Below, in pieces: positions 12,817-60,878 of a stretch of DNA of 64,000 nt. The position numbers were made by a program, and so were the translations under genes. Below the pieces are notes generated by a model that saw nothing but the letters and a program-made list of their open reading frames with translations, searched no databases and was not told where the DNA came from. This DNA is from Rhodosorus marinus CCMP1338 (taxonomy: Eukaryota; Plantae; Rhodophyta): positions 992,001-1,056,000 of the forward strand of contig JAMWBK010000009.1 of assembly GCA_029953675.1 (NCBI GenBank), read 5' to 3'. Numbering within the stretch: position 1 is the first letter of the stretch; each line of letters opens with the position of its first letter.

Positions 12817-12999
12817 AGCGAAGCCCCTCCTCTCAAACAAAAAAAAAACAGTAAAACCCCCCACACAAATAGACAACCCGATCAACACCGATCAAAGATT
12901 TAATCAATCGAAACCTCGTATCCGCTCAAATACCATAAGAACAAGGAAGCTCCTACAGTGCTTCAAGAGAAACAAAAACTTTTCAAGTCGTCACCGCTA

Positions 13000-14110
13000 A
13001 AGAATCCCTGTCTAGTTCACCATTCCAATGAGCAAGGAATTCCGCTCCTTCATCCCGTCCCGAGTAGATGTTGTTTTCGCTTCTGGCGGATCATGCGACA
13101 ATGGTCAGAACGCTACCGGGTTTCTGACTTTTTAGATAACCTGATGAGAAAGCGGAATTGACCTTCAGGATTTACTTCAGTTAAGGGTTAAGTCTCTTCC
13201 AAGCAAAGCCAACGCTTCGCTCCCTCTTCCACCGGTTTTCGTCTCGTCAACGAGTAGATTTTGTTTTCGCTTATCGTGGACAGGCATTGTGGTGAGAATG
13301 CTATTGGGTTTCTGACTCTTGGATAGCGAGATGGGAGAGAGCAAACAGATCTCCTAATTCAGCTTCAGTGAGCGGTGAAGTTGCTTCGAAGCAAAGCAAG
13401 TGCTTCCCTCCCTCTTTCGACCGGTTTTCATCTGGTCTTGAGTAGATTTGGTTTTCGCTTCTCGTCGATCCGGCAATATTGGTGGGAACGTACTGGGCTT
13501 CTGACTTTTGTATAACCTGATGAGAGATCGAAATTGACCTTCAGAGTCTGTTTCAGTCGAACTTCAAATCGCTCTGAATCTGAGCAAATGCTTCCCTCGC
13601 TCTTCCGAGCGGTTTTTATCTCGTCCGCACGATCGAGGTGAGAGTGCAGGTTGGATTTTTGACTGCGGTTATGCTGATGGGAAAGAGGAAGAGACCTCCC
13701 GGGCAACTTCAGGGAACGGCGAATCCGTTTCCACGTAAAGCCAATCCCTCCCTCCCTCTTCCGAACGGTTTTGACCTCGTCTGGATCGGGCAATAGTGTT
13801 GAGAACACTTGCGGTGATGATGATGGGTGAGGGAACAACCTGCAAGCTTCAGTCAACGATGAAGTGGCTTCCAAGTAGAGGAGAGGGGTCCCCTCCCTCT
13901 TCCGAGTATACTAAATTTTCGTATCCCGACGATCAGCCCATAGTGGTGAGAATGCCGCTGGATCTGATGTTGGATACGCTGGTGGGAGAGATTCCGTGGG
14001 GTTCGTAAAACTGGACTCTGTTCAGTTAACGATGATACCATTTCCGAGTAAACTCGAATGCTTTCCTCCCTGCTCAGAACGGTTTGACTTCTGCTTTGCT
14101 CGTCGATAAG
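13000..14110. repeat. Degenerate tandem array, about 6 units, about 188-190 bp period decaying to 140-175 bp
   Basis: GAGTAGAT-TGTTTTCGCTT at 13062, 13252 and 13440. Core CCCTCTTCC-A-CGGTTTT (with variants) at about 13222, 13410, 13598, 13754, 13895 and 14068. Confidence 0.9.
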
Positions 14111-15820
14111 GCAAGAGGTGAGAACGGTGTAGCTTTTGGTGGGAGAGAAGGGTATGAGGGCTGGCCCCGTGACGCCGCTTCTAAGTAAAACACGTCATTT
14201 TTCCCTACCCCTGAGGACGGTTGTTCAGCTTGTCCCAGAAGATCTGCTATGGACTGGGGTACTCGCGCTCAAAGACCCTCTGTCAAATCCGCACCGAATA
14301 CTCCAAGATTAGCTCAGCAGCAACATGAACTGACTCATGGAAGTCCTGCCTGATCTTTCAGCTTCATGGTTTTAAGGTATTGTGTCGCTACGTAGTGGTG
14401 ACCTCTCGAGCTCTGCTGCACTCAACAAGATGATGTTCTCAGTCTAGGCTACTCTGGGGAAAATCGTCTTGGTTAAAAGCTCTGCGTTGTTGTCCAGGAG
14501 AGTGTGCGTCTCTGCGCAGAGACGCACGCTCTCCTGGCGATAAGCGACCTGTAACAATAAGTCAATGTGGATACACCCCCTCGCGCTCCGTTCCAATATC
14601 CATCGAAGCGGACTTGTTTGGGACGGTCAGTCTGTACTAGTAGACGAGGTGAGGGTGAGTTTCTCATCGGCTAGCTACTCTGAAGAAAGAAGAGAATGCC
14701 AAGAAACGCGTAGGGCACCCGCAGAGACTTCAAGACTAGAGTGTACATAAGCCAAACCCTGACTATCCTATCTGTTTTCTAGTACTGTTCAGGTTCTCAC
14801 ATAGTCCAATAGAGTTAAGAAACCTCACTCAAGCGCTGCGGTTTTCGTGTTGCCTAGTTTTCCTGTATTGCAGGAGAAAAACAACCTATATCATATATTT
14901 AGACGTATACATCTATATTTTAAAACATGTCCTATTCTCTAGAATTCGTATTTCTAACCTTTTTTTCATTCCTGAGCGGGAGAAATACAAAGCAAACTCG
15001 AAAAAATTACATTTAAGTGCATTCAGTCCCAAAAAAGTGCATTCTAGATCTTGCTATCAAATGCACAACCTAGGGGGGGGTTAGGGAGTGTCCCAAAATT
15101 ACACTCCATTCTCTCTTTTATCTAAAATATTTTTAGCGGGAGAGTGAAAGCTCGCTCATCATATCTGCAAGAAAACAACATTTCTCTTCACGAATAAAAT
15201 ACTGACACGTCACCCTAACGGATTTTTTTGTCCATATATAATTTTGTAGAAGAAAAAATATTCTTCGGGCTAAACATGCATTGAAAATGGTGAAAAAAAT
15301 AAGGTCCAGCTGGAGCAGAGAAAAATTTAGCGTTGATATGGAGAGGGGGGGGGGGTATAACTTAGTAGAAAAAACTATTTTCCGTTATTTACTTGTAAAA
15401 AGTAAATTTTTAGAGGATCATGAGAATTTTGTTGTACGGGATAGTTCTTGAGATACAGTTGAAGGATAATTTTTTTTGTGGATTCAATTTTTGTTTTGGA
15501 TGGATAACTTCCACCATCTCAGGCACTTGTTTTTTTTTATTTTAGAGGGATTTTGGAAATTGGCAAAATAGAGAGTTTACTGTCCTTTTCCTTGACAGCA
15601 GACTTTAGCGGAGGAGCAATTTCCATTTTTTTGGGGGGGTGGGGGGAGTGTTATGCTGCTGACGACTTAAGAAGGGATTGTGGAGGTTTGTTAGATGTGA
15701 AGAGTTTGGGATGGGTCGGAGAAGGGGAGGGGGGGAGGGGGGAGGAGCTTGGTGGTTGGAGTGGTAGTAGAGGGTTGAATTGAAATCTTGAGGGGTAACG
15801 TGAGAACTCGCGATTTTTGA

Positions 15821-15860
15821 GTGTGCGTGTGTGTGTGTGTGTGTGTGTGCGCGTGTGTGT
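15821..15860 (+). repeat. (GT)n microsatellite
   Basis: Near-perfect GT dinucleotide run of about 40 bp upstream of the CUE-domain gene. Confidence 0.95.
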
Positions 15861-15973
15861 TATTTTAGGGAGGAGGAAAAGGTTGGTGAGAATTCCTTGT
15901 GGGGGTTTGTTTCGATTGTTATAGTAGTTGAGCGGGGATTGCTTGTTAGGATAGGCCTGGCGCTGTTGTGCAG

Positions 15974-17121
15974 ATGAATACGGAAATGGAGCAGAAGGTT
16001 TCTGCCATGGTGGCGATTTTCCCGTCTGTGAGCAGGGATAGGCTTCGAAGTGCATTGGATTCGCAGGGTGGAAACGTAGAGAGTGCAATCAACATGCTGC
16101 TGGCAGAGACTCGTGAGCCGGAGTAAGCAGGACTGCCAGCAAGCGGCGTTTTCGATCATCTTGAATTTGCTCGGACGGCAGGAGAATGATGATGCTTATT
16201 TGGCTGATCAAGGATTTTTTGCATTATTTCCGATTCACAGACCGACCGAGCAACCCGTGAATAGTAGCATAGTTTACGACTCTGGAAATGCTACCTTGGA
16301 TGCTGCTAGAACATTACAGTTAGCTGAGGATGAACGACTTGCGCAGATGCTGCAGGTGTGTCCCGCTTTCATGTTTGACTGTGCCCTAGATTTCCGGACA
16401 CCCCGTAGCCCGTACATGGTCACGGATCTGACTTCGCCTGTGTTTCTTAACGTATTGCAGAGGGAGGAAATTAGCAACGCCAACGGGGCCGGAACTGGAC
16501 TTGGCGATATAAATGTTGGTGTGTGGTCGCTCCCTTCTGCTAACGATGTCCAGTCCGGTATGCATGTTGTGTATGACAACATCAAGTACTACTCAGATGG
16601 TAAGCACTAATGTACAGATGCTGGACGCATGCTTCGCTTGCGGTTCCGTTCAGGATCAGAAAATTAACTCCATTTCGTCAATGTTGCAGCTGCTTACCGT
16701 CGGATGGTGGACTTGTATCAGCAGTATGTTGACGGCGGTGAGGGTAGTGGCGTGGTAAGTACAGCCGCATTTCTGTCGTTAGCCCACGCAAGAAAATTAA
16801 GTTGCTTGTATATGCTCCGTTTCATGCAGAGAGGTGAAAGGCGACCAGACGAATCAATTCAGGATGAGGTCAGAGTGGTTAGATCAGGGATGGCCGACGA
16901 GAGCACAGCAAGTCTCAGGACAGCGCACACGGCGGGATATTCCGGTAAGGAGCGGTACACAGAATTTTATCTGGTGAACGAGGCATTTACTGAGACCGAC
17001 CGTGCTTCTCTTGTTGTTATTTTTACTCAAAAACTCTCCAGTTCCGTCGTCGCGAGCGAATGATGTGGTACCAAGAAGAAGACCAACTGCAACGGTGGAG
17101 GAGAGCTCAAAAGACAAGTAG
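15974..17121 (+). CDS. CUE (ubiquitin-binding) domain protein, multi-exon
   Basis: First exon MEQKVSAMVAIFPSVSRDRLRSALDSQGGNVESAINMLL matches CUE (MFP...L...G-VE-AI--LL). AEDERLAQMLQ follows, typical of CUEDC1-like proteins. Downstream exons are inferred from GT-AG sites. Confidence 0.75.
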
Positions 17122-17340
17122 ACCGGTTCTTTCCCTTTCCTCCGCTGCAATGCGAATGTAAAAAAGGTGCTTTTGTGAACAAAACATGACCAAGATGTAC
17201 CGACTTGTCGCCTTTGTTCACGCCTTAACAAAATCCATCCGGTCAAAAGGCCCCCACCTCGCGAGTCGATGATCAGGACTCTATTGTTGACGCAAGTGAT
17301 CGCGCGGTTCCCTTAGTGTCAGCCTCTCCAGAGCAGAGCT

Positions 17341-18660
17341 CTATTCAGGGGGGGTCAGTAGCTTCATAATATCCGTGATCGAGATTACGCCGCTGGGCGA
17401 CATTGAATTTTCCACAATCCACAATCTGTGAGTTCTCAACGCAACAAGCTTCTCCACGGCCTCTCCAAGGCTTCTGCTTGAACCGACCGTGAAAACCGGG
17501 TAGGTATCCTGGCATGGCAAGAACAACAATAGCAGTGAGACTACCTGAGAATCACACACCTTTCGAGGACGAGGCCCGGTGCTTTTTGCTTACCCGCGCT
17601 TGATTGTCGGAAGAAAATGCCTCCTCCCTCTTGACGTGGCCTAAAAACTTATCCACCTCCAACCAAAAGAAGTGATAATGCCGCTTGCGAAGGATCCACT
17701 TTACATCGGATAGACTCAAGGCACCGATAATTGCACTGAGATCAGCAAGCACGAACGTTCAAAGTTAGTGAGTGGAACCCACACCCCCGAGTTTGTTCAC
17801 GAGCACGAAACACGATTGGAATTCATACTTTCGAGCATTGGTTATTGCAACGCTGGAGATGTTCTTCTGGAGGAGCAGTTTAACGCCTTCGATGACCAAA
17901 CTATCGTGTGCAACTGCGAGGACGGTGCCCTTAACCATTCCCAAGTCCTTCAAGCTGCGACTCATAACACCCTTCAACTTGGGCAGGTTCGCCTGCAGAA
18001 ATCCCAACAGCAGTCCCTGCGAAAGCATACCCTCGAACTCACCGTGTTCAGCAACTACAGCTGTTCTGTGGATGCGGTTGCCGAACTGCCTCACAGGCAT
18101 GGTGAGCGTATCGGATGGTAGTACCGACGAAAACTGTATCCAAACGGATGATGATTAGATTCACTAAATAATAATATGCAGCCAGTGCGATAGCTGATGA
18201 AAGGGATCCCATTGGTTCTCACCGTTCGCTCAACAATAGTGGCAACTGGAACCTTAGGTCCAACAGAATGCAACAGGTCAGACATATTAAGCTCTTGCGG
18301 GCGTTTGTTTTGCGGCAACTTTGCGACCAGGGATTCAACAAGTGTGCGATAAGTGAACACTCCGATCAGTTGTTTCTTCTCCAAGTTTTCCACCGGGGCG
18401 GAAAGAATATTGTTCTTCAGCAGAATCTGCGGGATAAACGACAGCGAGGAATCAGTCCAAACAGTAGGGTAGAGCCATCTGATTCATCAAGGCCCAAGAA
18501 GAAAACCTGTGCAAGCGTCGATTACACTAACCTCGCATGCTCCCTCCACGGACTCATCTGCATTAATCACGATCGCATTCTGCTGCTTGATCAGCTCTCC
18601 ACAAGTCATTGAGCTCCAAAGCTCAGTCTCAGCCCTCACATCATCCTCCGACAACACCAT
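17341..18660 (-). CDS. CBS-domain protein (AMPK-gamma/SNF4/Sds23-like), multi-exon
   Basis: Repeated CBS motifs: INADESVEGACEILLKNNILSAPV, HRTAVVAEHGEFEGMLSQ, SLVIEGVKLLLQKNISSVAI, SLGEAVEKLVALRTHRLWIV..GVISITDIMKLL. Confidence 0.85.
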
Positions 18661-45562: not shown

Positions 45563-46093
45563 TATCACTCCTGAAGCCCACCGAAAAACAAAGAAACAGA
45601 AAAAGACACTCTTCTCTCCGCTCGCAAAACCAACACCCTCCTCTACCCCCCCCCGGGCAAAAAAACCAGAAAAACAAATCCAATCCCAGGTTTTCCCAGA
45701 CCCAAACGAAAGGAACCTGCTGTACACAACAAAATCTTACCTCAACCTTCCCTCCACCAGCCCCAAACTCAACCTATCCCATATACACCCCAGACACCCA
45801 AACCCTCCCTCCCCCCCTTTTCGCCCCTTAGAAAACTTTCCAACAGACAAGACCAAAAACCTCCTTCAATACCAGCAGAAAAACCCAAAACACCACCACC
45901 CCCTCAGGAAAGCAAAATTTTAATTTCACCTCAACACCATATTAATCGATTAATTGAACAAATTACGAACATCAGCACAAAAAGACAGCACATCAGCTAA
46001 CCCCCATGGCCCCTCTCTCGCCTCTCTCCTTTTTGCTAAATCGCATTCTCAACTCGCCCTCTTGCTTGCTGACATAAGGACGGTGCTAAAATG

Positions 46094-46348: not shown

Positions 46349-46824
46349 ACTAAAATCTCTTAAGTATTTTTTAAAAAAAGATAATTTTAGGATACACGTA
46401 TAAATAATTTTTATTATTCCAGGTTTTTGGGGGTTGGTTTAGAGTGGATCGGAGGCTGTGGAAAAGGCTTTACCGTTGGGGTTGGGAGAGGGGGGAAGGG
46501 GGAGGGTCCATTCGAGATTGGCCGAGTTTGGGGGAGAGAATTTGCAGGAGTGAAGTGAGAAGTTTGGAGGAGGAAGGGGATTGCGGTTTGGTGGTTTTGT
46601 GTGTGTGAGTGTGTTATTTTTTTCGGGTTCAGCAGCCCGTTCTGTGTTTTTGAGTTGGTCTGGTGTCCCTGCATCGGTTGATGAAGGGGATCGACTAGGG
46701 GTGGGGAGTGTAGGGTTTTTCTTTACGCTTCAGAAAGGGGAACATATTTTTAGGTTGGGAGGAGGGGGGGGAGGGGAGGGGCGGGGTTGTACAGTAGATT
46801 GGGAGAGGGGGGGTCTTGATAGTC

Positions 46825-49671: not shown

Positions 49672-52335
49672 ATGGCATGGCGGACTGGGTTTGGAAGGGG
49701 CCTTAGTAGCTTCAGCTGTCTCGGGAGGGTGCGATTTTCTGATTCCCGGAACTTTGATGGTCGCCGGTATCTAGATAATCTATCGAGAACCTTGAGTACT
49801 GTAGCCGAGAGCAAAGCGGGGTTGGAGACTTCCGAGTCCGAGAAGGTGTTGGATGCACTCAGCACCTTCCGAGATTCTCTGAGAGACGGAAGATTGTCGA
49901 TTGCGTTGCAGGGTTTCAGAAATGCTCAGGAGCATGTGAACGTCGAGGACGCGGTAAAGCTCTCTGATGCTCTCTGTGCAGCGGGGAGCAACGAGGATGC
50001 GCTCGAGGTGTACAAAGGAATCGCAACTGCTGGACGAGGGAATGAGCTCCAGGAACGCTTTCTACTGCCGTATGCTCTAGCCCACGCTCGCGCTGGAGAG
50101 GCGGAGGAGGCGTGGGCTCTCATAAAGCAAAACCCAAAGGAGGGACGTGAACTACTGTCGGTTTTAGTGGAACTCGGAGAGAACAGAGCGCTCCAATGTC
50201 TTGCGAATACCCGTCCGGAGTGGTTCCTTGAGGGTTTCAAAGAAATCGGAAAGCCTGGTCGTGAGGATGAGCTCAAAGAGCGCTTTTCGGTGGAGTATGC
50301 AATTGCTCTTCTGCGCATGGGCGAGGTCGAGGAGGCGTGGACTCTCGTGAGTCACGTACCAGAGAAGAGGCACGAGCTCCTGGCGTTTCTGGCTGAATTC
50401 GGGGACACTGCGACACTGCAAACGCTTGGGGAGGCGTGTGCGAAAGAGGTTCGTTCCGAATTATACCTCGCCGTGGCCGTGACCCATGCTGTACATGGCA
50501 GGAGGGACGCTACGGTTGAGGAAATTGTCACTTGGTCGAAATCAAAGGACTCGGCAGCGGAAGAAATCAGGATGTATGTGCAGTCATTCACGCTTGCGGG
50601 AGCTAAGCGCGGAAAACTCACTAAACCTGGTAGGAGCTTGCGGTTTGCAGTCAGTCTCTTCCCCCAGAGCGAGAGGCAGGAGGATTCTCAACGGGCTGGT
50701 GCAGTTGCTCTTGCTGCTCTTGTTATGTTGGAAGGGAAAGCGCTGTTTCGTGAGGCTTTGAAAGAACCGGAAAATGCGACCAAAGATGCGGTACTGGATG
50801 AGTTAAACAGAATTTTACTCAAGCGCCCTACTGACAGCACCGTGCAAAACGCATGGAGACTGTCCAGAGGCATATTCAGGATGGATCTTGAAGATCTCCA
50901 TCGGCATCTTGAGGCGATACGCTGTGGAAAATTCTTCGATGAATATAGGCATAAGACAGCATGGTACTTAGTTCAAGAAGCGAAAGTCTCAATGCTTATC
51001 ATGCCAACGCTGCAAACGTTTAGGGAGCTGTTGCGCATCTGTCGCAACCACAGTCGACGCTTCAACACTGCATCGACGACGGCACGAATGGTAATGAGGG
51101 AGATGGAACTCTTGGAGGTCATTCCGGACGAGGAATGCTACGCTCTCGTGCTTGAAACTCTCGGGAGAAGAGGCGACTGGGTTCGTGCTGTCGATACGTT
51201 AACTGGTTACATCGGGAAGATGCAGTCCCCGGCGATGTTGACTAGAGGCTTCGAGGGCGCTATACAAGCAAACGCGATTGCTGCTAAAAAGGCGGAATGT
51301 CTGTTGCTTTTGGGACGTATGAAGGACTATGGTTTGAAACCCACGAGGAACAGTTACAACTCACTGCTGGTATGCTTGGGCAAATGTCGGGATAGGGCAT
51401 CTCTACTTCGGGTTTTGGAGACCATGTACAGTGGTGGGGATCCGGATATGATGCCAACTAGTAAGACCTTCACGGGCCTTTTATCGGCTCTGTGTGTTGC
51501 GCGAAGGAGAAAACTCGCGGTTAGTATTTTCCACGACTGTGCCGAGCGCATTGCACAACTAAATTCGCCCGTGGTGTACAATTTCATGATCGAGGCATCG
51601 ACGATGACCAAGGACGTACAGTGGGCGGAGGACGTCTACAAGTCAATGAGGGATCACAAGATTACCCCGAACGGGAACACCTATGTAGCCCTCGCCGGGT
51701 TCTACTGTTCTCGACAGGAGATTCCAAGGGCTAGTGAATACCTTGCGAATTGTCTGGAGCAGAAAATGAAGATTGAAGGACATGGCCTTATGCGAATCAT
51801 TGAATGCCTCGCTTTCGGGGGTTTATTTAAGGAAGCGATTGCCATGGCGGAATTTGGCCGGGACTCGCCGTTCCCTGTGGAGCTGTTTTCTCTCGACCTT
51901 AACGACTGGAGGAAGTTGAATCTATGGGTCGCCTTTGTAAGGGGGTGCATGAAGCGCCTACGTTTTCCGGAAGTCGCAAGCGGACCGAGGGCCAGGATAC
52001 AGACTGAGATATCTTACATGAGCACGCGTCCTGAAGTTGCCTTGGAAACACTTTTAGCTGCTGAAGACGGTCTGAAACGGTTGTCAAGTCCGGCACGAAG
52101 GCCTCCAACTTGGCTCTCACTTCGAGTTATGCAGGCAGCACATCACTGCGGATTTCCGGAAATTTGTGCTCGCGTTCGGACGAATTACTTCCTTTCTACT
52201 CGTGAATTCAGGGAGAAATTGAATCTAACCGGCCCTGTGCCTACGACGGCGATGCTTAGGCGCCAACTGCGGGAGAATAAAATACCTGCGCAAAGGCCAA
52301 TCCTGAGGAAGCAGAAAACTAATTCTAACTTGTAG
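49672..52335 (+). CDS. Pentatricopeptide repeat (PPR) protein, probably mitochondrial, intronless
   Basis: 887 aa with an Arg/Ser-rich presequence. 35-aa PPR-like units include PDEECYALVLETLGRRGDW, PTRNSYNSLLVCLGKCRD, PTSKTFTGLLSALC, SPVVYNFMIEAS..QWAEDVYKSMRDHKITPNGNTYVALAGFYC. Confidence 0.9.
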   Translation: MAWRTGFGRGLSSFSCLGRVRFSDSRNFDGRRYLDNLSRTLSTVAESKAGLETSESEKVLDALSTFRDSLRDGRLSIALQGFRNAQEHVNVEDAVKLSDALCAAGSNEDALEVYKGIATAGRGNELQERFLLPYALAHARAGEAEEAWALIKQNPKEGRELLSVLVELGENRALQCLANTRPEWFLEGFKEIGKPGREDELKERFSVEYAIALLRMGEVEEAWTLVSHVPEKRHELLAFLAEFGDTATLQTLGEACAKEVRSELYLAVAVTHAVHGRRDATVEEIVTWSKSKDSAAEEIRMYVQSFTLAGAKRGKLTKPGRSLRFAVSLFPQSERQEDSQRAGAVALAALVMLEGKALFREALKEPENATKDAVLDELNRILLKRPTDSTVQNAWRLSRGIFRMDLEDLHRHLEAIRCGKFFDEYRHKTAWYLVQEAKVSMLIMPTLQTFRELLRICRNHSRRFNTASTTARMVMREMELLEVIPDEECYALVLETLGRRGDWVRAVDTLTGYIGKMQSPAMLTRGFEGAIQANAIAAKKAECLLLLGRMKDYGLKPTRNSYNSLLVCLGKCRDRASLLRVLETMYSGGDPDMMPTSKTFTGLLSALCVARRRKLAVSIFHDCAERIAQLNSPVVYNFMIEASTMTKDVQWAEDVYKSMRDHKITPNGNTYVALAGFYCSRQEIPRASEYLANCLEQKMKIEGHGLMRIIECLAFGGLFKEAIAMAEFGRDSPFPVELFSLDLNDWRKLNLWVAFVRGCMKRLRFPEVASGPRARIQTEISYMSTRPEVALETLLAAEDGLKRLSSPARRPPTWLSLRVMQAAHHCGFPEICARVRTNYFLSTREFREKLNLTGPVPTTAMLRRQLRENKIPAQRPILRKQKTNSNL

Positions 52336-53559
52336 TATCAACATGGTCTAACTTATGTAAAACTGAACAGGCTTGCTTTTAATTATGAATGCAGCGCAAC
52401 TGAGAACATCTGCAAGTGCGAGAATTGCTTCAGGCAAAGGCATAAACCCTTAGTAGCGTAGGAACCTAGCCGATCGCTTGGAACTTCGTCACAAGCGCAC
52501 AGAGCAGTGACTAGTTTGAATGGACGACCAGCCGCGGTTAAGCACGGTCAAAGAGCGAACTTCAAAGACTGTGTTACAGGTCTATCCTGCAAAGCCGGCA
52601 AGCATCTTTGTTCTCACGGAGATGCATGTCCTGGTCAATTCGCAGAAACTCAGTCGGGACTAGAATCGAGAAAGGACGTCAAGGCTAGGGGATACATCCA
52701 TTGCCATCCTACGTCGAGACTTGGCTATCCTCGCTACTTGAGGACAGTTCGGGCCATGCGAATCCAAGTGGACATGCCAATCAATCGCCTTTCTCGTTTG
52801 TTCTCACAGACGATGATGATGACGAACTAACGAGGCGAACGGCTTCGAGAACGCCAGTGACCGCGCATCCGCGTTCGTAAGCCCAAAAAACGAAGAAAAG
52901 GGCGGCAACCAGGTATGCCAGTCGCCTGGCACGCTCATAGAAGCATTCCTCCAGCCAGGGCTCACCGGCCTGGTCTACAAAACCAATTCCTTCCCTTTTT
53001 TGGTACACAAGCCGCTCATCTGCTAGCTCCCCTCGAACATGAGCGCTGTCCGTGCCACCAGCTGCTTAGGACGCTCGAGGAAGCACTCCTTTATCTACAT
53101 CGGGACGGGGGTAGCTCGATTCACAAAAAATTCCCAAGAGTATTCGACTCCCTTCAACACTCAGAATCAACAATGAGCGCGTGGGGTGTGGAAGGGGTAT
53201 TGAACCCCCCAAGACAAAACTAAAAGCAGGTCCACCAGTTCCCTTAGGACGCCTTCATCCAGAGAATAAAAGTTCAACCTACATAACCCAAGTATGCGAT
53301 GTCCTGCAGGAGTTCATGTGAACTCCCGAAAGCCAGAATCCGGATCACGCGTAGATCTGCAACGGTCGTGAGACCAGTTTTAGGGCTTTTGGATAGTGAT
53401 GACGTCGTGGAGTTAAGTTGAGATACCTTCGGCTGGGTGAGGAGGGGGGAAGGGGAAGGAAGGGAGGTTGGAGTAGGAAGTTTCTTTTTGTTCCCTTCAT
53501 TCTGGTGTTGAGCATATTACGTTAGTTAAGTCATCTGTTCTGTGAGTTTTTGATTAGGG

Positions 53560-54900
53560 ATGGAAGGGGAGCAAGGTTTAAGTGTGCTTGAGATATGCAA
53601 ACGCGGTCGTGCGGCTGCTCAGCGTATGCAGACGGCGAGCAGTGAGCTGAAGAACGCTGCTCTGGCGGAGATTGGTAAGGTATTAGAGTCCAGAAAAGGA
53701 GATATTGAGGCCGCAAATGCGGCGGATAAGAGCTATGCGGAGGAGAAGAAGCTGTCGAATACTCTGCAGAAGAGGCTGGACGTCACGGGGCCAAAGTTTG
53801 ACCAGATGATTCTCAATACAGAGGGCGTAGCGAAAATTGAGGATCCGGTGGGGAAGGTGAAGATGGCAACAGAGCTCTCAGATGGACTCGAGTTGTACAG
53901 GATGACTTGCCCGATTGGTGTTATATGCGTTATCTTTGAGGCCCGTCCTGAGGCAGGAGTGCAGATTTCCTCCCTTTGCATTAAGTCTGGAAACGCTCTG
54001 CTTCTCAAAGGTGGAAAAGAGGCTGCAAATTCGAATGAGGTGCTCGTAAACTGCGTTCGCGAAGGACTTGAAGCAGTAGGCTTACCAAAGGACGCGGTCC
54101 AGCTGGTGTCGACCAGGGATCAAATCAACGAGTTGTTGAGCATGGATCAGTACGTCGATTTGATCATCCCTCGCGGCGGTAACGCACTGGTGAAGTACAT
54201 TACGGACAACACTAGAGTCCCTGTCTTGGGACATGCAGACGGCATATGCGCGGTCTACGTGGACAAGGACGCGGACGTCGAGAAGGCGTGCAATCTTGTT
54301 GTGGATTCAAAGGCGCAATACGTTTCTGTTTGTAACGCTGCGGAGACGCTTCTTGTACAGCGTTCAGCGCTGAGTACACACTTGGCACCTATCGTGAAGA
54401 GTCTTTCGGATGCGGGAGTGTCGATTAAGGCAGATCCAGAATCCCTTGCTCTGATTGACTCGAAGAATGTGACGGCCGCTGGTGCAGAAGATTTTGTTAC
54501 CGAATTTCTGGACTATGTCATTGCGCTGAAGGTGGTGGAGTCGGTGGATGAAGCGATCTCGCACATCAACGCCCATGGGTCTCATCACACCGACCTCATC
54601 GTGACAGAGAATACGTCTACAGCGGAGCGCTTCCTGGCAGGAATCGATTCAGCGAACGTCTATCACAACGCCTCCACGCGCTTTGCGGATGGATTCCGCT
54701 ACGGATTTGGAGCGGAAGTTGGAGTATCAACGACTAGAACCCATTCCAGAGGTCCAGTTGGAGTGGATGGCCTCTTAATATATAAGTATCGCCTCTACGG
54801 CAACGGACATACGGTGGGTGGAATGGCTAAGGCTAACACTCCATTCACACACAAGCCAATCGAACCAACTTATCGTCCGCAGAGAAGCAACGAACTCTAG
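53560..54900 (+). CDS. proA: Gamma-glutamyl phosphate reductase (glutamate-5-semialdehyde dehydrogenase), standalone, intronless
   Basis: PIGVICVIFEARPE, KSGNALLLKGGKEA, DLIIPRGG, GHADGIC, VCNAAETLL, HINAHGSHHTD, NASTRFADGFRYGFGAEVGVST..RGPVG. Confidence 0.97.
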   Translation: MEGEQGLSVLEICKRGRAAAQRMQTASSELKNAALAEIGKVLESRKGDIEAANAADKSYAEEKKLSNTLQKRLDVTGPKFDQMILNTEGVAKIEDPVGKVKMATELSDGLELYRMTCPIGVICVIFEARPEAGVQISSLCIKSGNALLLKGGKEAANSNEVLVNCVREGLEAVGLPKDAVQLVSTRDQINELLSMDQYVDLIIPRGGNALVKYITDNTRVPVLGHADGICAVYVDKDADVEKACNLVVDSKAQYVSVCNAAETLLVQRSALSTHLAPIVKSLSDAGVSIKADPESLALIDSKNVTAAGAEDFVTEFLDYVIALKVVESVDEAISHINAHGSHHTDLIVTENTSTAERFLAGIDSANVYHNASTRFADGFRYGFGAEVGVSTTRTHSRGPVGVDGLLIYKYRLYGNGHTVGGMAKANTPFTHKPIEPTYRPQRSNEL

Positions 54901-56441
54901 ACTTATTTTTAATAAAAACTGGAAGGAAACAATGGACGTACCTGAACTTCAGACAGCCCAGTCCGTGCGCTGGTTTCCCGGAGTGCGAACCCCAAAAGGC
55001 ATGCTCAGGACGTGCCGGCGAAGAACAGATCTACAAGCAATTATTGCAGAATCAGGGATTTCTGTACGAGAACTAGCTACTACGACACTTTTCGCGTCCA
55101 CTTTTTCTCCTGTTCAGGATCCTGAGCTATGAGACTCTTGCTCGAGCGCGGGAGATAAGCCACAGCTTAATGTCAATGGCGAACTTGAGGATTGCGAGTA
55201 CTATCCGCACCAGGTCAAAACTGAATCCTTTTTCAGGAAACCATGTCACACAGCGTCCAAGGGCGCGCTCATGATCGTCCAACCTTCGTCGCTACAGAGC
55301 AATCGACTTTTACTTAACAGTTCATCAAAAACCGCGTCAACCCACTCGATCCGTCGTTTACTAAGCAAAACCCGGGGGTCCGACCCGTGGACCGCAATAT
55401 CCAATGAAATCAATAATAAATAGATGAAATCCCAGATATTCTACCAATTAAAAACATACTTACCTCGTGGCGTGTTTTTATTTGTCAAAAAACTGCTCCA
55501 ACTTAATAAAACTTCATCAATTCAGAATTCAATAAACGTATTAATCGAATACTTTTACCCTCTACCCTCAAAACTTTCCAGAAAAACCGCAGTCAGATTT
55601 TCCAATCTATTTCACTCAGAATCCAGGGTGAACTTTCGAATCAGAATATCCACCCCTGGAAAACGAACACATAACTGCCCGCCAAATCATGAATAACGGT
55701 CAATTATTTCTCCTTATTGGTAAATTCATGACGAGTTTTTCACAGGTCCCAACCTCAACAAAAAAAAAGAATATGTATTAAAATAATAATTTCACCATCC
55801 GGACCTTTTTGCGGCAAATTACTTCCATATTAAAACATTCTGAACTTCGTCATCTAATTTACGCGGAATCCATGGGGAGCATTCGTCCCAAAAGGTTTAC
55901 CCCTTGTATAAGAATGTTTCCCACCGGCCAGAATACAAATAATTACAAAATAATTCTCCATAATTACGGAGGTTATAAAAGGATAATTTAAGATGGGGGG
56001 GGGGGGTAAAAGAGGTGAGGTCTCCTCGGACATTTTTGGATATTAGCCCTATGAAACAGGTAAACAATGGGATTTTTGAGGGGGTACTGAGTATTGATGG
56101 TGAAAAGGCCCAATTTGTCGCCATTTTTAGGTTTTTTTTTTTGTATATAAACAAAGTTTGTGTGAGGGGATTGGGAGGGTGAACAGGAGCGTGGACGACT
56201 GAGCGGAGTAACTGTTCTGATGGACTCTGAGCCTTTTGTGTATGTGATACGTTTGTTTTGCTTCTTTTGTGGTTTTTAAGGTTTCAGCTGATGTGGATCA
56301 GGTTCGGGAGGTGCGCTATTAAGGGGGTCGGGTGTTTGACTCAGTTCATCTGAGTTGGAGGTCTCGGAGAGCTATCTTGGGGAGGGTGTTGGGGGGGTGG
56401 GGTGCGGAGGCATTGTCCCTTTTTTTTGTTTTTGAGGAAAA

Positions 56442-57797
56442 ATGAGTTATCTGGATCTGGTTAGTCTGGAGAAACTGGAGATGGCGCCAGCTGGGTTTAA
56501 GCCCACGGTTATCGTGAAGGTCGGCACTTCGTCTATTATGCGGGAGAGACAGGACAATCCTCAGGCGTGGAATGATCCGGTAAGTGTTTTTGTTTGAGTT
56601 ATACTACTCTGTTGGCTTTTTTGGTTCTTGATGGGGATGCGCAAATCCGTGAGTATGGCCAAGATCTGACCAGAGCGACTTTTTGGTACTGTTTTCCAGG
56701 CAACTGCGGCTGGAGAAGGGTTGAATTCCAGTCAGGGTGAACTAGCACTTTCCACGCTCGCTTTAATCGTTGATACTTTGATTGCTTTGAAGCGAGCTGG
56801 TTTCTGGGTGGTTCTTGTGACCTCTGGTGCTGTCGGTGTTGGATGTCGCCGACTCGGGATAAAGACAAGGCCCTCGCGTATTGCTGAAAAGCAGGCGCTT
56901 GCTGCGGTAGGAATGGGAAGGCTGATGCATCACTACGAAGAGCTGTTTGCCATAGCAAACGAATCCACAGCACTGGTGCTCGTCTCACGCTCAGACTTTG
57001 GGAAGAAGAGCAAGTTCATCAACATCCAGAACACTCTTCACGAGCTTTTCAAACTGGGGGTAATCCCGATAATCAATGAGAACGATACAGTAACGTCGAA
57101 CGACTTCAAGTTCGGTGACAACGACAGACTGTCCGCATTGGTGGCCGGAATGGTATTTGCTAGGTACCTCTTCCTGCTTACCGACGTTGACAGACTCTAC
57201 ACGGCGGACCCACGAAACAATCCCTCAGCCAAACCAATTGAAACTGTTGTGGACCTGGAAGAATTGGATCTGAACGTTAACAGCAGTGGCAAGGGGGGTA
57301 CGCAGTGGGGAACCGGAGGGATGGAAACGAAACTAGCAGCAGCAAAATTGGCCACTGCAGGAGGTTCGAAGGTTGTTATAATTCACGGTCGAAAACCTGA
57401 ACGTATCCTTGATTTTGTCCTTGAACGTGAGAATAAGATCGGTACCGTCTTCCTCGGGTCGCGAACGCCCGTTTCGAGCGCGAGAAAACTCTGGATCCTC
57501 CACGGCCTTGTACCGAGTGGAGGCATCGAAATCGACGCGGGTGCGGTCAGAGCGGTGATAAACAAGAAGAGCCTGTTCGCGGTAGGGGTGAGAAAGATTA
57601 CCGGCACGTTCTTTCAAGATGGGGCAATTCGCATTTTCAACAAGGACGGTTCTGAGATTGGTCGTGCGATTACAAACTATGACTCGAGCGATCTCGTGAA
57701 AATTCTTGGATCGAAATCTAATAAGATTGAGGAAATCCTCGGTGAGAGGGCTGGTCCGGAGGAAGTCGTCCATAGGGATAACCTTGTACTATTCTAA
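56442..57797 (+). CDS. proB: Glutamate 5-kinase with C-terminal PUA domain, standalone (2 exons, intron 56580-56699)
   Basis: Exon 1 carries VIVKVGTSS. Exon 2 carries LVTSGAVGVG, QALAAVG, IPIINENDTV..FGDNDRLSALVA, LLTDVDRLYTADP, GTGGMETKL and the PUA region ending VVHRDNLVL. Confidence 0.97.
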
Positions 57798-58240
57798 ATG
57801 AGAAAATAACTGGACCCCAGGCCGCGAAGTGGACGAGTTCCATCGCGGAGCTTCGGAAGTGCTCTCCCCAACTTTGACTACCGTATGTTTTTTTGCGTCG
57901 TTGAGAACTAGAAAGGAAGTTGATGGGTAGCTCTTTACAATAGGAGCGCCAAGACTATGAGAATATACCGAAATGCTGTAACAAACGTATTAAAAATCAA
58001 CTGAATCAGTAGCCCCTGGGTTGGTGCTGAATGCCAAAAGCGCTGTCTACTATGGCTCATAGCGCCGAAGCCGTTCTGCTCGAGTTATAGTCCATACACG
58101 GTGGCATTTGAAGCACGGTTAGGGCTGACGGAGTCGCTTCTCTCACATGTACATATCAACGCTCTGATCCACAAACCATTGTCACCGATCTGTATATATG
58201 CAGGAAACCTCCTGGTCTACGCGTACAAAACCATTAGCAC

Positions 58241-59278
58241 CTAGCCATGATGGCCGTGGCTCTGCCGGAAAACATACTCGAAAACGTAGCCTTCGATGTC
58301 GCATGAGTTCTTACAAGTATAGATGGCCAATGTCCCAAAGTCTATTCCATAGTTGTCCGCCTTAAGGAAATAGAGCAGCTGGGGCATTACTTGAAACTCC
58401 AAGGTTCGTATTCCTCCGCAGCTCTCACAGACAGGGGGACTTTTTAAAAGTTTCCCTTGAGAGAAAGGCCACAAAACTCTGCCTTCACGACCAAAACGGA
58501 CTACTTGCTCAGGGTCTTTGGCGACTTTCGCTTGAAACTCAAGCAAATCTGCATCTGCGGTTTTGAACGAGTCTTCCGGAAGCTCATCCTCCGCAGCATC
58601 CTGGAGAGTTCCTTTGCTGGCGGGCAGAGCGCTGCCTTCTGGAACTGAATCGTCCGCTGTTACCTCGTCCTCCATGACGAGAAGGCTCTCCTCAAACCGC
58701 CATCGTATTCTCGCTTCCTCCTCTGCTCCGTTTTCCAAGCTCCCGCAGTACCTTTTGTGCCCAATACGCCAGTCAAATGTTTGACAGTTTTTGGAACAGT
58801 ACCATGCCTGTGAACACTTAGCGCAGCGCTTGGTCGCACGAAGTCCACAAAGCTGACAAAGGTTACACAGAGCATCGGAATGCTCAGTTGAGTCGGGATC
58901 ATAGACCTCTGGATAATACTTATTCTTCCGCGCAAGTTGAGAGCGAAGAGCGGCAACGCCAGAACAGTCTTTCGTTCTGCAGATAAAAACGAATAGGGCT
59001 CTGTGGAAAGCACTGTGGTTGGAATCCAAGGGGCTATAGACTTGGAGCAGGAACACCATCTCAAATGTGCATACTCTACACCTCAAATCCTCAGCCGATG
59101 GGACATTCTCCGGTTCCAACCACGCGGCTATTCCTCCCACCTTACTCGGAAAATGCTCCCTCCACAGTTCGTGTGGATCTACAGACTTCTCCAGAAACCC
59201 TAAAGTCGTTTGAACGTCATCCCCACCCATGTTATCCACCAGACCCGGCTCCCCTCGCGCACCTTCTCGATCGTCCAT
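58241..59278 (-). CDS. PDCD2: Programmed cell death protein 2 (zf-MYND + PDCD2_C; uS5 chaperone family), intronless
   Basis: SKVGGIAAWL, CRVC..FLLQVYSPL, MYND finger CQLCG..RCAKC..YCSKNCQTFDW..GHKRYC, and C-terminal CESCGG.RTLEFQVMPQLL..IDFGTLAIYTC. Confidence 0.95.
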   Translation of the reverse strand: MDDREGARGEPGLVDNMGGDDVQTTLGFLEKSVDPHELWREHFPSKVGGIAAWLEPENVPSAEDLRCRVCTFEMVFLLQVYSPLDSNHSAFHRALFVFICRTKDCSGVAALRSQLARKNKYYPEVYDPDSTEHSDALCNLCQLCGLRATKRCAKCSQAWYCSKNCQTFDWRIGHKRYCGSLENGAEEEARIRWRFEESLLVMEDEVTADDSVPEGSALPASKGTLQDAAEDELPEDSFKTADADLLEFQAKVAKDPEQVVRFGREGRVLWPFSQGKLLKSPPVCESCGGIRTLEFQVMPQLLYFLKADNYGIDFGTLAIYTCKNSCDIEGYVFEYVFRQSHGHHG

Positions 59279-60878
59279 TGTGCATGAATCACAGTCTGGA
59301 ATAAAAATCCAAGCTCATCACTATTTTCAATAACGGTGCAGATAGGGCATGAAACAAGAACAGCACTGTTCTAACCCTCGTACAGACGCCCACAAAAGTT
59401 TCGTCCATCCCGCACCCGTAAGTCTACTCTTCTCACTCGCGCGGCAGTGACTTTGTCGAGCGCCATCAACAATCAAAAAAAGGAAGAAAACAAAGACATC
59501 AAAAAGTTCTATCATAAAATATTGCAAATAGTACGAACAACTACAATGAAAATTCAAACAAACATGAAGCTTTTCCGCGCTACGGTTAAATTTTAATAAT
59601 ATACTATATAAATCAAATTAAATATAATTTATTTAGTAGCTAGAGTATTATGGACAGTTTTGAACTAAATATTAATTTATTTAAGATAATTATTCTCATT
59701 AATGTATTTTCTATCCGTTAGAACAGGTTAGAATCATCTCCATTAGTGTCTCTTCGTTAATATTTGTTTTCATATAGGAAAAATTGGAAAATAAAATAGA
59801 TAATTTTAGACGTTTGATCGATTCTACTGGAAAATTAGTTTTAAAGGGTTTTATTTTCCTTGAAAATAAATAATTTATTGATGCTTAGGGGCAACGAACC
59901 CGCGGTCGGTTGTGCAGGTAGTAGTCGTTCAATGGATTCCCGTGAGCGATGAAAGCTTTGAAGTTCTTCTATTCTTTGCCATATCTGAGTTGCCATCCTG
60001 GAAATGGCTCAACGGTTCGAATTGGATGCTTGGTTCAGCTGAAGGAACTTGTCCACATCTAGGAAGCCTCTTTCAGACTCATGGATTCCCGCACTCGACA
60101 TGTTACCGCAGCGCCGGAACCGAGTTGAGAAGAGCGCGGGTCTGTCAGCGCGATAATGGCGGTTTCCACCACGATTTTTCTCTCTCTCCTGGAATGAATT
60201 CATGAGGCTGTCTGTTCCCTCAATCCCAAGACGGGGGAGACGATACTGTTGAAGAAACCGAACAGGTGCGAGCGGGCTAATAAAACCGAAGCGTGCTCTT
60301 TCCACTTAAGAGGGAATATCAAGATATCCGGCAGCGTCACCTAGCTTAGACAGTAGGAGCAGTAAACAAGCATTTTCACATGGAGAGTTTTCCGCAAAAA
60401 TCCGAACAAGGATGAAACCTCACATCGAAAGGGAATACCGGAAACAGTCAAACCGAACAGGCCGCGGTAAACCTGGAAGCTTGCTGTAGGATTCAATGCT
60501 ATTTCGCCTTTGTTTGCATTCCTCTCATCTGAATCCAGTTCACGAAAGCCCACAGTTCCGCCCAAACCTCCTCGGCCCAGCTATCGCTTTCAATGGACAA
60601 TGGAATTCAGCATCTCCGAAAAGACCCCTTTTGCATGGAATCGAAACTAAGTACTTTTTATCACAAAACAATTTTTTTTGACGTTGTTGCTTCGTTGTGG
60701 AAAGCAATGTTGTTCGGAAGGTGCCAGGGATGTCTCTTCGAATAGATTACGGTCCATGAGAGGTTCATCTCTCAGGTATAAGATCAAGCATGGATCGTTT
60801 TCAAGGACAAGGTGGTCTCTCAGGTTACTCGCTAGAAAATGCAGGAACACGAACATTTCCTATAAGGTACGAGGAGAA

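What the first reader, a model, noticed from the sequence alone, without database searches (positions are those of the whole stretch)
53560..57797. Adjacent standalone proA and proB: a eukaryotic mini-cluster for proline biosynthesis
Seen: two consecutive same-strand genes, 1.54 kb apart with no recognisable gene between, encode the first two steps of proline synthesis. Each has its own ATG, stop and G/T-rich 5' flank; neither has an obvious transit peptide. Known: plants and animals fuse these activities as P5CS (kinase first), fungi keep PRO1/PRO2 separate, and many bacteria have a proBA operon. Here the order is reversed (A then B), so this is neither a broken P5CS nor a simple copied operon. 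Inference: the kinase resembles cyanobacterial ProB as I recall it (LFLLTDVDRLY-ADP, QWGTGGM, intact PUA), and the reductase has the GHADGIC/PFTH type shared by cyanobacteria and fungi. The pair may be endosymbiont- or HGT-derived and kept together for co-regulation, for example for osmolyte proline. The labile gamma-glutamyl phosphate intermediate favours a stoichiometric complex. This could be an alternative solution to, or a precursor of, gene fusion.
Basis: partly seen in the sequence, partly recalled or inferred. Interest (0 to 1): 0.7.

Follow-up and report, generated by a model that had tools for sequence, protein, structure and literature searches.

The report
Neighbouring proline-synthesis genes in a red alga
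In the red alga Rhodosorus marinus the genes for the first two steps of proline synthesis (proA, proB) lie side by side as ordinary, separately transcribed eukaryotic genes, and they are also close together in Cyanidioschyzon, so the pairing is probably not chance but its purpose is untested.

Summary
The window is Rhodosorus marinus nuclear DNA. proA is one ORF (53560-54900, 446 aa). Both pass NCBI's equivalog cut-offs and keep their catalytic motifs. Nothing recognisable lies between them.

The origin idea is not supported. Both proteins fall in pan-eukaryotic clades that include fungi. The kinase does resemble cyanobacterial ProB, but fungal, green-algal and alveolate ProB do too. The pair is not an operon relic: the spacer is 1.5 kb, proB has an intron, and a transcript from another strain starts about 200 nt upstream of proB. 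It is not a split P5CS either.

One new result bears on linkage. In Cyanidioschyzon merolae 10D and Cyanidiococcus-like contigs, proB and proA lie 5 kb apart, convergent, with two unrelated genes between and no other shared neighbour. They are unlinked in Porphyridium, Galdieria, Agarophyton, Vitrella, Hondaea and a related thraustochytrid-like contig, and Myrmecia. The chance of such a replicate is about 0.005. Linkage is therefore probably non-random (about 0.6), but co-regulation is untested. Interest is modest.

The parts
53428..53481 (+). G/A-rich tract 80-130 nt upstream of the proA ATG, probably 5' UTR or promoter. It is a generic feature of this genome.
   Evidence: Found by the tract scan and read directly. 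Similar tracts lie upstream of 5 of 12 long ORFs in the window.
53560..54900 (+). proA: glutamate-5-semialdehyde dehydrogenase (gamma-glutamyl phosphate reductase). Single exon, 446 aa, no N-terminal extension.
   Evidence: ORF. NCBIfam NF001221 518.7 bits and TIGR00407 484.1 bits, both above cut-off. The best solved structure is yeast PRO2, 1vlu, at 392 bits. The CNAAETLL block (Cys258), which I take to hold the catalytic cysteine, and GHADGIC are conserved. It is 96% identical to the transcript-derived protein P0241 from another R. marinus strain.
54901..56441 (.). 1541-nt spacer with no recognisable gene. It is AT-richer in the middle, with GC 0.35-0.40 over 55500-56100.
   Evidence: No Rfam match at gathering score, no tRNA, no Pfam on its ORFs, no tblastx match, unique in the window and GC profile.
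56238..56441 (+). Transcript-supported 5' UTR of proB. It contains the G-rich tract 56366-56416.
   Evidence: The MMETSP Rhodosorus transcript contig L003 aligns from window 56238 onward and does not reach proA. The G-rich tract was found by the scan.
56442..56579 (+). proB exon 1, 46 codons. It carries the VKVGTSS nucleotide-binding motif.
   Evidence: Sequence and translation and alignment.
56580..56699 (+). proB intron, 120 nt, GTAAGT...CAG, with in-frame stops.
   Evidence: The spliced transcript L003 skips it. The relative from SRR22824290 (L004) has an intron at the same codon position.
56700..57797 (+). proB exon 2, holding the rest of the amino-acid kinase domain and the PUA domain. 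The whole protein is 411 aa, glutamate 5-kinase.
   Evidence: Pfam AA_kinase 4.7e-35 and PUA 2.1e-16. TIGR01027 390.3 bits against a cut-off of 186. E. coli ProB 2j5t scores 235 bits. The motifs NENDTV, GDNDRLSA, LLTDVDRLYTADP and GTGGMETK are conserved.
58241..59278 (-). Context: a convergent PDCD2-like gene (zf-MYND + PDCD2_C) 443 nt downstream of proB.
   Evidence: Pfam. The same neighbour occurs in the MMETSP transcript contig L003 and in the relative's genomic contig L004.
49672..52335 (+). Context: a PPR-repeat protein gene 1.2 kb upstream of proA.
   Evidence: ORF and Pfam PPR_2/PPR_3.

Best explanation
Shown:
- The window is nuclear DNA of the red alga Rhodosorus marinus.
- proA (glutamate-5-semialdehyde dehydrogenase) and proB (glutamate 5-kinase with a PUA domain) are two intact, eukaryote-type genes in tandem, 1541 nt apart.
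- proB has a spliceosomal intron.
- In the transcript contig available from another strain, the proB message starts about 200 nt upstream of its ATG and does not reach proA.
- Both proteins belong to pan-eukaryotic clades, so the pair is neither a transferred operon nor a split P5CS.

Inferred:
- Both enzymes act in the cytosol, because neither has a transit-peptide-length extension.
- ProB phosphorylates glutamate. ProA reduces the labile gamma-glutamyl phosphate with NADPH to glutamate-5-semialdehyde. This cyclises to P5C and is reduced to proline by a P5C reductase encoded elsewhere.
- The adjacency is a eukaryotic gene-order feature that is probably not accidental (my estimate is about 0.6). 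The same two genes, and no other shared neighbour, lie 5 kb apart in Cyanidioschyzon merolae and Cyanidiococcus-like genomes, which sit on the other side of the deepest red-algal split.
- The likeliest benefit is balanced expression from one chromatin neighbourhood, or co-inheritance, of two enzymes that must work stoichiometrically. No shared promoter or polycistronic transcript is involved.
For: Identity of the source: the ProB cluster contains KAJ8902366.1 from R. marinus on the same 1,832,788-bp contig.

Enzyme identity and integrity.

Intron and separate transcript. The intron position is conserved in a relative.

ProB tree (careful, 77 rows):
- Eukaryotes form a clade at 96/89 that includes red algae (100/97) plus Picozoa (98/87). 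Fungi, a green alga and an apicomplexan were identified by name.
- Cyanobacteria are sister to this clade.
- The combined clade has 100/100 support against other bacteria.

ProA tree (careful, 77 rows): eukaryotes plus one small Planctomycetota MAG clade have 100/99 support, and cyanobacteria form a separate 100/99 clade.

Linkage replicate:
- C. merolae 10D, AP006499.2: proB 10001-11740 (+), a peptidyl-tRNA hydrolase gene (+), a lipoate-protein ligase gene (-), proA 16711-18183 (-).
- The same block occurs in metagenomic C. merolae-like contigs and in a Cyanidiococcus-like contig.
- tblastx of the 64-kb window against these loci finds only proA and proB in common.

Chance of finding the partner within +-10 kb in at least one of the seven further lineages examined is about 0.005. 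This is the summed ratio of the span searched (20 kb or less) to genome size, using genome sizes from my own knowledge.

No proC lies in the window or in those loci.
Against: The genes are not linked within +-10 kb, or lie on different contigs, in these lineages:
- Porphyridium purpureum
- Galdieria sulphuraria
- Agarophyton chilense, searched over -7.7/+4.3 kb
- Vitrella
- Hondaea
- a thraustochytrid-like metagenomic contig
- the green alga Myrmecia

All of these were re-checked by tblastn.

Orientation and spacing differ between the two linked lineages. Rhodosorus has a tandem A->B pair. Cyanidioschyzon has convergent B-> <-A with two intervening genes. A single conserved regulatory architecture is therefore excluded.

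The Rhodosorus adjacency was picked post hoc from a genome scan.

No expression, localisation or interaction data were available. The G-rich 5' tracts are generic, so there is no evidence of a shared cis-element.
Confidence: 0.6

Rival explanations
1. Pure chance. Two housekeeping genes happen to be neighbours in Rhodosorus and happen to lie within 5 kb in Cyanidioschyzonaceae. The order has no functional or historical meaning.
For: Most sampled lineages are unlinked. Orientation, spacing and intervening genes differ between the two linked lineages. With several hundred consecutive-enzyme pairs and about 2.4e-4 per pair (8392 genes), roughly 0.1 such adjacency is expected per genome. Cyanidioschyzon has a very compact genome.
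Against: The independent replicate has a chance probability of about 0.005 over the lineages tested. No other gene is shared between the two neighbourhoods, so the replicate is not a by-product of a larger conserved block.
Confidence: 0.35
2. Relic of a transferred bacterial or cyanobacterial operon. On this view both genes arrived together from an endosymbiont or by HGT and have stayed adjacent since.
For: The top non-red-algal hits of ProB are cyanobacteria at 49-52% identity. The proA->proB order with short spacers does exist in Planctomycetota, a spirochaete and archaea (L047, L063, L060, L012, L034). A small Planctomycetota MAG clade groups with eukaryotic ProA. An exclusive red-alga plus cyanobacteria ProB clade is not formally rejected (AU p = 0.058).
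Against: Both genes sit in clades shared with fungi and other plastid-less eukaryotes. The ProB proteins of bacteria with proA->proB order are only 32-39% identical to the window's ProB and fall in a distant clade. In none of the cyanobacterial loci that group with the named cyanobacteria in the ProA tree was proB found within 6 kb of proA; the one exception, L071, groups elsewhere for both genes. The 1541-nt spacer, the intron and a separate transcript start are eukaryotic features. Most red algae are unlinked.
Confidence: 0.03
3. A remnant of, or an intermediate towards, a fused P5CS-type bifunctional gene.
For: The same two activities are fused in plants and animals. Same-strand adjacency is the usual precondition for fusion.
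Against: The order is reductase then kinase, the reverse of P5CS. The P5CS model scores far below its cut-off for both proteins. ProB keeps the PUA domain; the P5CS kinase-domain matches end at about query residue 245, before the PUA region at 269-340. ProB scores 235 bits against E. coli ProB and 96 bits against the P5CS kinase domain. ProA is closest to yeast PRO2. PMC11061531 finds a single origin of P5CS separate from eukaryotic ProA and ProB. The 1.5-kb spacer is full of stops.
Confidence: 0.02

Closest known systems
Standalone eukaryotic ProB/ProA, such as Saccharomyces cerevisiae PRO1 and PRO2 (PRO2 structure 1vlu)
   Same: They are separate monofunctional glutamate 5-kinase (with PUA domain) and glutamate-5-semialdehyde dehydrogenase. 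Both window proteins fall in the same pan-eukaryotic clades as fungal sequences. Yeast PRO2 is the best solved-structure match for ProA.
   Different: In yeast the two genes are on different chromosomes (own knowledge). Here they are immediate neighbours.
Bacterial proBA operon (E. coli b0242-b0243) and the proA-proB arrangement of Planctomycetota, Spirochaetota and some archaea
   Same: They encode the same two enzymes on the same strand. The A-then-B order also occurs in bacteria.
   Different: Bacterial spacers are roughly 10-160 nt in the adjacent pairs, and the genes are presumably co-transcribed. Here the spacer is 1541 nt, proB has an intron and a separate transcript start. The proteins are not the closest relatives of those operon-encoded ones.
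P5CS (delta-1-pyrroline-5-carboxylate synthase) of plants and animals
   Same: It carries out the same two reactions, with the same need to hand over labile gamma-glutamyl phosphate.
   Different: P5CS is one polypeptide with the kinase first. Its kinase-domain matches to ProB stop before the PUA region. It forms a distinct clade (PMC11061531). TIGR01092 is not met by either window protein.
Eukaryotic primary-metabolism gene clusters, such as yeast GAL1-GAL10-GAL7, the DAL cluster, and nitrate-assimilation clusters of algae and fungi (own knowledge; the nitrate case is cited in PMC11061531)
   Same: They are non-homologous genes for consecutive steps of one pathway, physically adjacent in a eukaryotic nuclear genome, each with its own promoter.
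   Different: This case has only two genes. Co-regulation is not shown. Conservation is patchy and the architecture differs between the two lineages that show linkage.

Membership tests
Glutamate-5-semialdehyde dehydrogenase (ProA; NCBIfam NF001221 / TIGR00407) | Whole-protein score above the curated equivalog cut-off | tested here: met
   NF001221 scores 518.7 against 289, and TIGR00407 scores 484.1 against 317.45.
Glutamate-5-semialdehyde dehydrogenase (ProA; NCBIfam NF001221 / TIGR00407) | Catalytic cysteine and core motifs of the family conserved | tested here: met
   Cys258 in CNAAETLL, GHADGIC, EARP and NASTRFADG are invariant or near-invariant in alignments with E. coli, fungal and red-algal ProA. 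That Cys258 is the catalytic residue is my own knowledge of the family.
Glutamate 5-kinase with PUA domain (ProB; TIGR01027) | Score above the curated cut-off, with AA_kinase plus C-terminal PUA architecture | tested here: met
   TIGR01027 scores 390.3 against 186. Pfam AA_kinase gives 4.7e-35 and PUA gives 2.1e-16.
Glutamate 5-kinase with PUA domain (ProB; TIGR01027) | Substrate- and nucleotide-binding motifs intact | tested here: met
   VKVGTSS, TSGAV, NENDTV, GDNDRLSA, LLTDVD and GTGGMETK align with those of E. coli ProB.
P5CS bifunctional enzyme (TIGR01092) | A single polypeptide with the kinase N-terminal and the reductase C-terminal, scoring above the cut-off | tested here: not met
   There are two ORFs separated by 1541 nt containing stops, in reversed order. 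The scores are 424.1 and 129.9 against a cut-off of 796.75.
Prokaryote-type pro operon (transferred) | Short intergenic spacer and one transcript | tested here: not met
   The spacer is 1541 nt. The proB transcript contig from another strain begins at window 56238. proB contains a spliceosomal intron.
Prokaryote-type pro operon (transferred) | Both genes nest within one bacterial donor lineage | tested here: not met
   Both genes fall in pan-eukaryotic clades. An exclusive red-alga plus cyanobacteria ProB clade is disfavoured, though only at AU p = 0.058.
Eukaryotic metabolic gene cluster | Non-homologous genes of one pathway physically adjacent | tested here: met
   Steps 1 and 2 of proline synthesis are adjacent with no detectable gene between them. 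The step-3 gene proC is not nearby.
Eukaryotic metabolic gene cluster | Linkage conserved, or recurring more often than chance, across lineages | tested here: inconclusive
   The genes are linked at 5 kb in Cyanidioschyzon and Cyanidiococcus. They are unlinked in seven other loci representing six lineages. The chance of the replicate is about 0.005. Close relatives in Stylonematophyceae could not be tested because the contigs are too short.
Eukaryotic metabolic gene cluster | Co-regulated expression of the members | not testable with these tools
   No expression data are available here. The only relevant observation is that the G-rich 5' tracts are generic.

The most novel reading that the evidence does not exclude
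The proA-proB linkage is an ancient, selectively maintained two-gene cluster of primary metabolism in red algae. On this reading it dates from before the Cyanidiophytina/Rhodophytina split, or was re-created by selection at least twice. It would be kept because the kinase and reductase must be made in balance to channel gamma-glutamyl phosphate. It would also show that eukaryotic ProA and ProB can travel together. That bears on the argument in PMC11061531 that eukaryote-to-eukaryote co-transfer is unlikely because pathway genes are unlinked.
Probability: 0.3. Interest if true: 0.6.

Novelty: new member of a known kind. Interest (0 to 1): 0.38.

Why it matters
The genes themselves are ordinary and already deposited. 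What is new is the gene order. Two consecutive enzymes of a core amino-acid pathway are neighbours in one red alga and lie within 5 kb in a very distant one, with nothing else conserved around them. If the linkage proves to be selected, it would be a minimal and experimentally tractable example of primary-metabolism gene clustering in a eukaryote, because C. merolae can be transformed. It would also be a natural comparison for the alternative solution to the same biochemical problem, which is fusion into P5CS. If it is chance, the locus is simply a correctly annotated pair of housekeeping genes.

Tried and rejected
- Cyanobacterial or endosymbiotic origin of the pair. This was suggested by the raw hit list for ProB. 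I rejected it as a red-alga-specific event once the unnamed long representatives were identified as fungi, a green alga, Picozoa and an apicomplexan and a careful tree was built. The first quick tree and its AU test were uninformative, because the constrained tree scored better than the free search. I replaced them with the careful tree.
- Planctomycete proA->proB operon as donor. The ProB proteins of those loci are only 35-39% identical to the window's and fall in a distant clade.
- A hidden gene or RNA in the spacer. Rfam, tRNA, Pfam, tblastx and self-BLAST all found nothing.
- A shared regulatory motif. The G-rich 5' tracts are common upstream of other genes.
- Synteny in the closest available relative (Logan SRR22824290, 69-74% identity). 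The proA contig ends 510 nt after the stop, the proB contig starts 41 nt before the ATG, and there is no overlap. This gave no answer.
- A metagenome scan for further eukaryotic linked loci. Apart from one unlinked thraustochytrid-like contig, it returned bacterial-type loci: only those carry proB near proA, and the other high-identity hits have 60-69% GC.
- A wider conserved block between Rhodosorus and Cyanidioschyzon. There is none.
- proC nearby. It is absent.
- A literature search for prior reports of the linkage. None was found in the library.
- Presence or absence of a P5CS gene elsewhere in the R. marinus genome. This could not be checked with the tools.


Full report
**What is there**

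The window is nuclear DNA of the red alga Rhodosorus marinus (Stylonematophyceae). The ProA protein is the representative of a cluster on a 1,832,788-bp contig. The ProB cluster contains KAJ8902366.1 (NDN08_006773, R. marinus) on a contig of the same length. The published CCMP1338 assembly has 31.19 Mb and 8392 genes (PMC10250338).

proA is a single ORF, 53560..54900 (+), 446 aa.

proB starts at the ATG at 56442, which is 1541 nt after the proA stop, and ends at 57797. It is interrupted by a 120-nt intron (56580..56699, GTAAGT...CAG) that contains in-frame stops. Three results confirm the splice:
- A transcript contig of another R. marinus strain (L003, 87.6% nucleotide identity) aligns to 56238-56586 and then 56695-59377.
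- The spliced product has the same length, 411 aa, as the deposited protein.
- A more distant relative has an intron at the same codon (L004).

**Identity and integrity**

- ProA scores 518.7 bits on NCBIfam NF001221 (cut-off 289). ProB scores 390.3 bits on TIGR01027 (cut-off 186). Neither reaches the P5CS model cut-off (424 and 130 bits against 796.75).
- Pfam finds Aldedh in ProA, and AA_kinase plus PUA in ProB.
- The closest solved structures are yeast PRO2 for ProA (392 bits, against about 342 for P5CS). For ProB it is E. coli ProB (235 bits, against 96 for the P5CS kinase domain).
- The catalytic and binding motifs are conserved.
- ProA starts exactly where bacterial ProA starts. ProB has only about 15 extra N-terminal residues. 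I therefore infer a cytosolic location. This is inference, not a test.

**The spacer and transcription**

The 1541-nt spacer has no Rfam match at gathering score, no tRNA, no Pfam-matching ORF, no tblastx match to other red-algal loci and no repeat elsewhere in the window.

The transcript contig L003 begins about 200 nt upstream of the proB ATG. At its other end it runs into the convergent PDCD2-like gene. It does not extend to proA. This argues for separate transcription units.

They also occur upstream of three other long ORFs in the window, making 5 of 12 in total. They are therefore not evidence for a shared regulatory element. In proB the tract lies inside the transcript-supported 5' UTR.

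**Origin**

After the red algae (51-55% identity), about 100 of the top 120 hits are at cyanobacterial level (49-52%), and more than 40 of them are named cyanobacteria.

A search of 50%-identity representatives brought in many longer proteins. By name these are Picozoa, a green alga, chytrid and kickxellomycete fungi, and an apicomplexan.

In a careful ML tree (77 rows):
- All eukaryotes form one clade (96/89).
- Red algae (100/97) are sister to Picozoa (98/87), as in organismal phylogeny.
- Cyanobacteria (100/97) are sister to the whole eukaryotic clade (100/100 against other bacteria).

Forcing red algae and cyanobacteria into an exclusive clade costs 12.5 lnL units (AU p = 0.058). This is disfavoured but not formally rejected.

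For ProA, the top 120 hits contain red algae, Rhodelphis, ichthyosporeans, Glomeromycota, a chytrid, a thraustochytrid, chromerids and some Planctomycetota MAGs, but no cyanobacteria. A scan of bacterial and archaeal genomes gave cyanobacterial ProA at 47-50% identity and one Planctomycetota lineage at 55%.

The careful ProA tree gives a eukaryotic clade with 100/99 support and the small Planctomycetota MAG clade inside it. True cyanobacteria form a separate 100/99 clade. With one acidobacterium, that clade is only weakly (85/75) the nearest neighbour of the eukaryotic clade.

Both genes are thus ordinary eukaryotic ProA and ProB. This agrees with PMC11061531, which found eukaryotic ProA and ProB monophyletic and inferred both in LECA.

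**Not an operon relic**

Adjacent proA->proB pairs do exist in Planctomycetota, a spirochaete and archaea (for example L047, L063, L060, L012 and L034; also many metagenomic loci). Their ProB proteins are only 32-39% identical to the window's and lie in a distant clade.

**Synteny**

Unlinked within +-10 kb, or as far as the contig reaches:
- Porphyridium purpureum. proA and proB are on contigs of 5.7 and 2.3 Mb.
- Galdieria sulphuraria. The genes are on different contigs.
- Agarophyton chilense.
- Vitrella.
- Hondaea.
- A thraustochytrid-like metagenomic contig.
- The green alga Myrmecia bisecta.

All of these were re-checked by tblastn.

Linked: in the Cyanidioschyzon merolae 10D reference (AP006499.2, L176) the order is proB (+), a peptidyl-tRNA hydrolase gene (+), a lipoate-protein ligase gene (-), proA (-). 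There are 4971 nt between the two pro genes. The same block is present in C. merolae-like metagenomic contigs and in a Cyanidiococcus-like contig. In that contig the downstream Aldedh gene is 53% identical to the window's ProA.

tblastx of the whole 64-kb window against these loci finds only proA and proB in common.

Within Stylonematophyceae, the proB-PDCD2 adjacency is conserved. The proA side could not be tested because the contigs are too short.

**How much is chance**

For a pre-named pair, adjacency in an 8392-gene genome has a probability of about 2.4e-4. With hundreds of consecutive-enzyme pairs, roughly 0.1 such case per genome is expected, so the Rhodosorus observation alone proves nothing.

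The Cyanidioschyzonaceae result is an independent test of a stated prediction. I summed the span searched (20 kb or less) over genome size across the seven further lineages examined, using genome sizes from my own knowledge. This gives about 0.005.

I therefore consider non-random linkage more likely than not, at about 0.6. The linkage could be ancestral and selectively retained, or re-created by selection. It has clearly been lost or never existed in several lineages. It has no fixed architecture, so a shared promoter or a polycistronic transcript is excluded as the mechanism.

**Mechanism (inferred from established enzymology)**

1. ProB phosphorylates glutamate.
2. ProA reduces gamma-glutamyl phosphate with NADPH to glutamate-5-semialdehyde.
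3. This product cyclises to P5C.
4. A P5C reductase encoded elsewhere completes proline. No proC was found in the window.

The instability of the intermediate makes balanced production of the two enzymes advantageous. This is a plausible, untested reason for keeping the genes in one chromosomal neighbourhood.

**Verdict**

- Standalone genes, not a split P5CS, not an operon: correct.
- An endosymbiont- or HGT-derived pair: not supported.
- Selected linkage: gains one independent, moderately significant replicate.
- Co-regulation: untested.

No report of this linkage was found in the searchable literature. Novelty: a new member of the known class of eukaryotic primary-metabolism gene pairs or clusters. 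Interest is modest.

Noticed in passing
L176 (C. merolae 10D AP006499.2) 10001-18183; L089, L090, L091, L175: In Cyanidioschyzon merolae and Cyanidiococcus-like genomes, proB and proA lie about 5 kb apart and convergent. A peptidyl-tRNA hydrolase gene and a lipoate-protein ligase gene lie between them. The block Pex19-ORMDL-proB-PTH-LplA-proA is conserved among these cyanidiophytes.
   Followed up: yes
L008 and proteins P0035, P0040, P0051, P0053: A small clade of Planctomycetota MAGs (UBA1662-like) has ProA nested within, or sister to, the eukaryotic ProA clade (100/99). Other Planctomycetota lie elsewhere in the tree. This could be a eukaryote-to-bacterium transfer or the bacterial sister of eukaryotic ProA. 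L008 has no proB within 6 kb.
   Followed up: partly
L047, L063, L060, L012, L034, L045, L042, L013 and many of L093-L172: The proA-then-proB order is common in Planctomycetota, a spirochaete, archaea and many metagenomic bacteria carrying this ProA subtype. This is the reverse of the E. coli proBA order.
   Followed up: partly
Trees: Cyanobacteria are the nearest sampled bacterial neighbours of the pan-eukaryotic ProB clade (100/100). They are also, weakly, the nearest neighbours of the pan-eukaryotic ProA clade (85/75, together with one acidobacterium). Both eukaryotic clades include fungi. Bacterial sampling was biased towards best hits, so this deep relationship is unresolved.
   Followed up: partly
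window 56520-56760; alignment A3 columns 70-100: Rhodosorus and Porphyridium ProB carry an insertion of about 20 or more residues just after the GTSS motif, relative to cyanobacterial and E. coli ProB. The proB intron lies inside this insertion. Its position is conserved in the SRR22824290 relative (L004 intron 184-374).
   Followed up: partly
P0249, P0130, P0129, P0131 (579-650 aa); L176 10001-11740: Cyanidioschyzon-type ProB gene models have an N-terminal extension of roughly 150-240 residues that Rhodosorus, Galdieria and cyanobacteria lack. It could be a targeting or regulatory extension, or an over-extended gene model. The Cyanidiococcus models range from 406 to 671 aa.
   Followed up: no
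window 57798-58240; L003 1456-1920; L004 1467-1960: proB and the PDCD2-like gene are convergent and only 443 nt apart. The MMETSP assembly merges both into one 3048-nt contig, which suggests overlapping or abutting 3' UTRs. This adjacency is conserved in a relative with 74% ProB identity.
   Followed up: partly
window: G-rich tracts at 2227-2283, 46470-46813, 53428-53481, 56160-56416; C-rich tract at 45735-45833: G-rich tracts of 30-70 nt lie within 400 nt upstream of 5 of 12 long ORFs, on the coding strand. This looks like a general 5' UTR or promoter feature of this genome.
   Followed up: partly
window 55300-56100: The middle of the proA-proB spacer is AT-rich (GC 0.35-0.40 against about 0.48 for the window) and unique in the window. 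R. marinus is reported to be rich in nuclear copies of mitochondrial DNA (PMC10250338). I could not test whether this stretch is one.
   Followed up: no
P0124 and P0126 (Galdieria phlegrea); Galdieria phlegrea has two ProB paralogues. One groups with G. sulphuraria and the other with G. yellowstonensis.
   Followed up: no
L071 ('Cyanobacteria bacterium OH_PDB_112'): This MAG has a proB-proA pair with a 9-nt spacer. Both of its proteins group away from the other cyanobacteria in the trees. It is probably a non-photosynthetic relative or a mis-binned contig.
   Followed up: no
L173 4151-9395 and window 49672-52335: In both Vitrella and Rhodosorus the gene immediately upstream of proA is a PPR-repeat protein, on opposite strand in Vitrella. 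tblastx gave no evidence of orthology, so this is probably coincidence.
   Followed up: no
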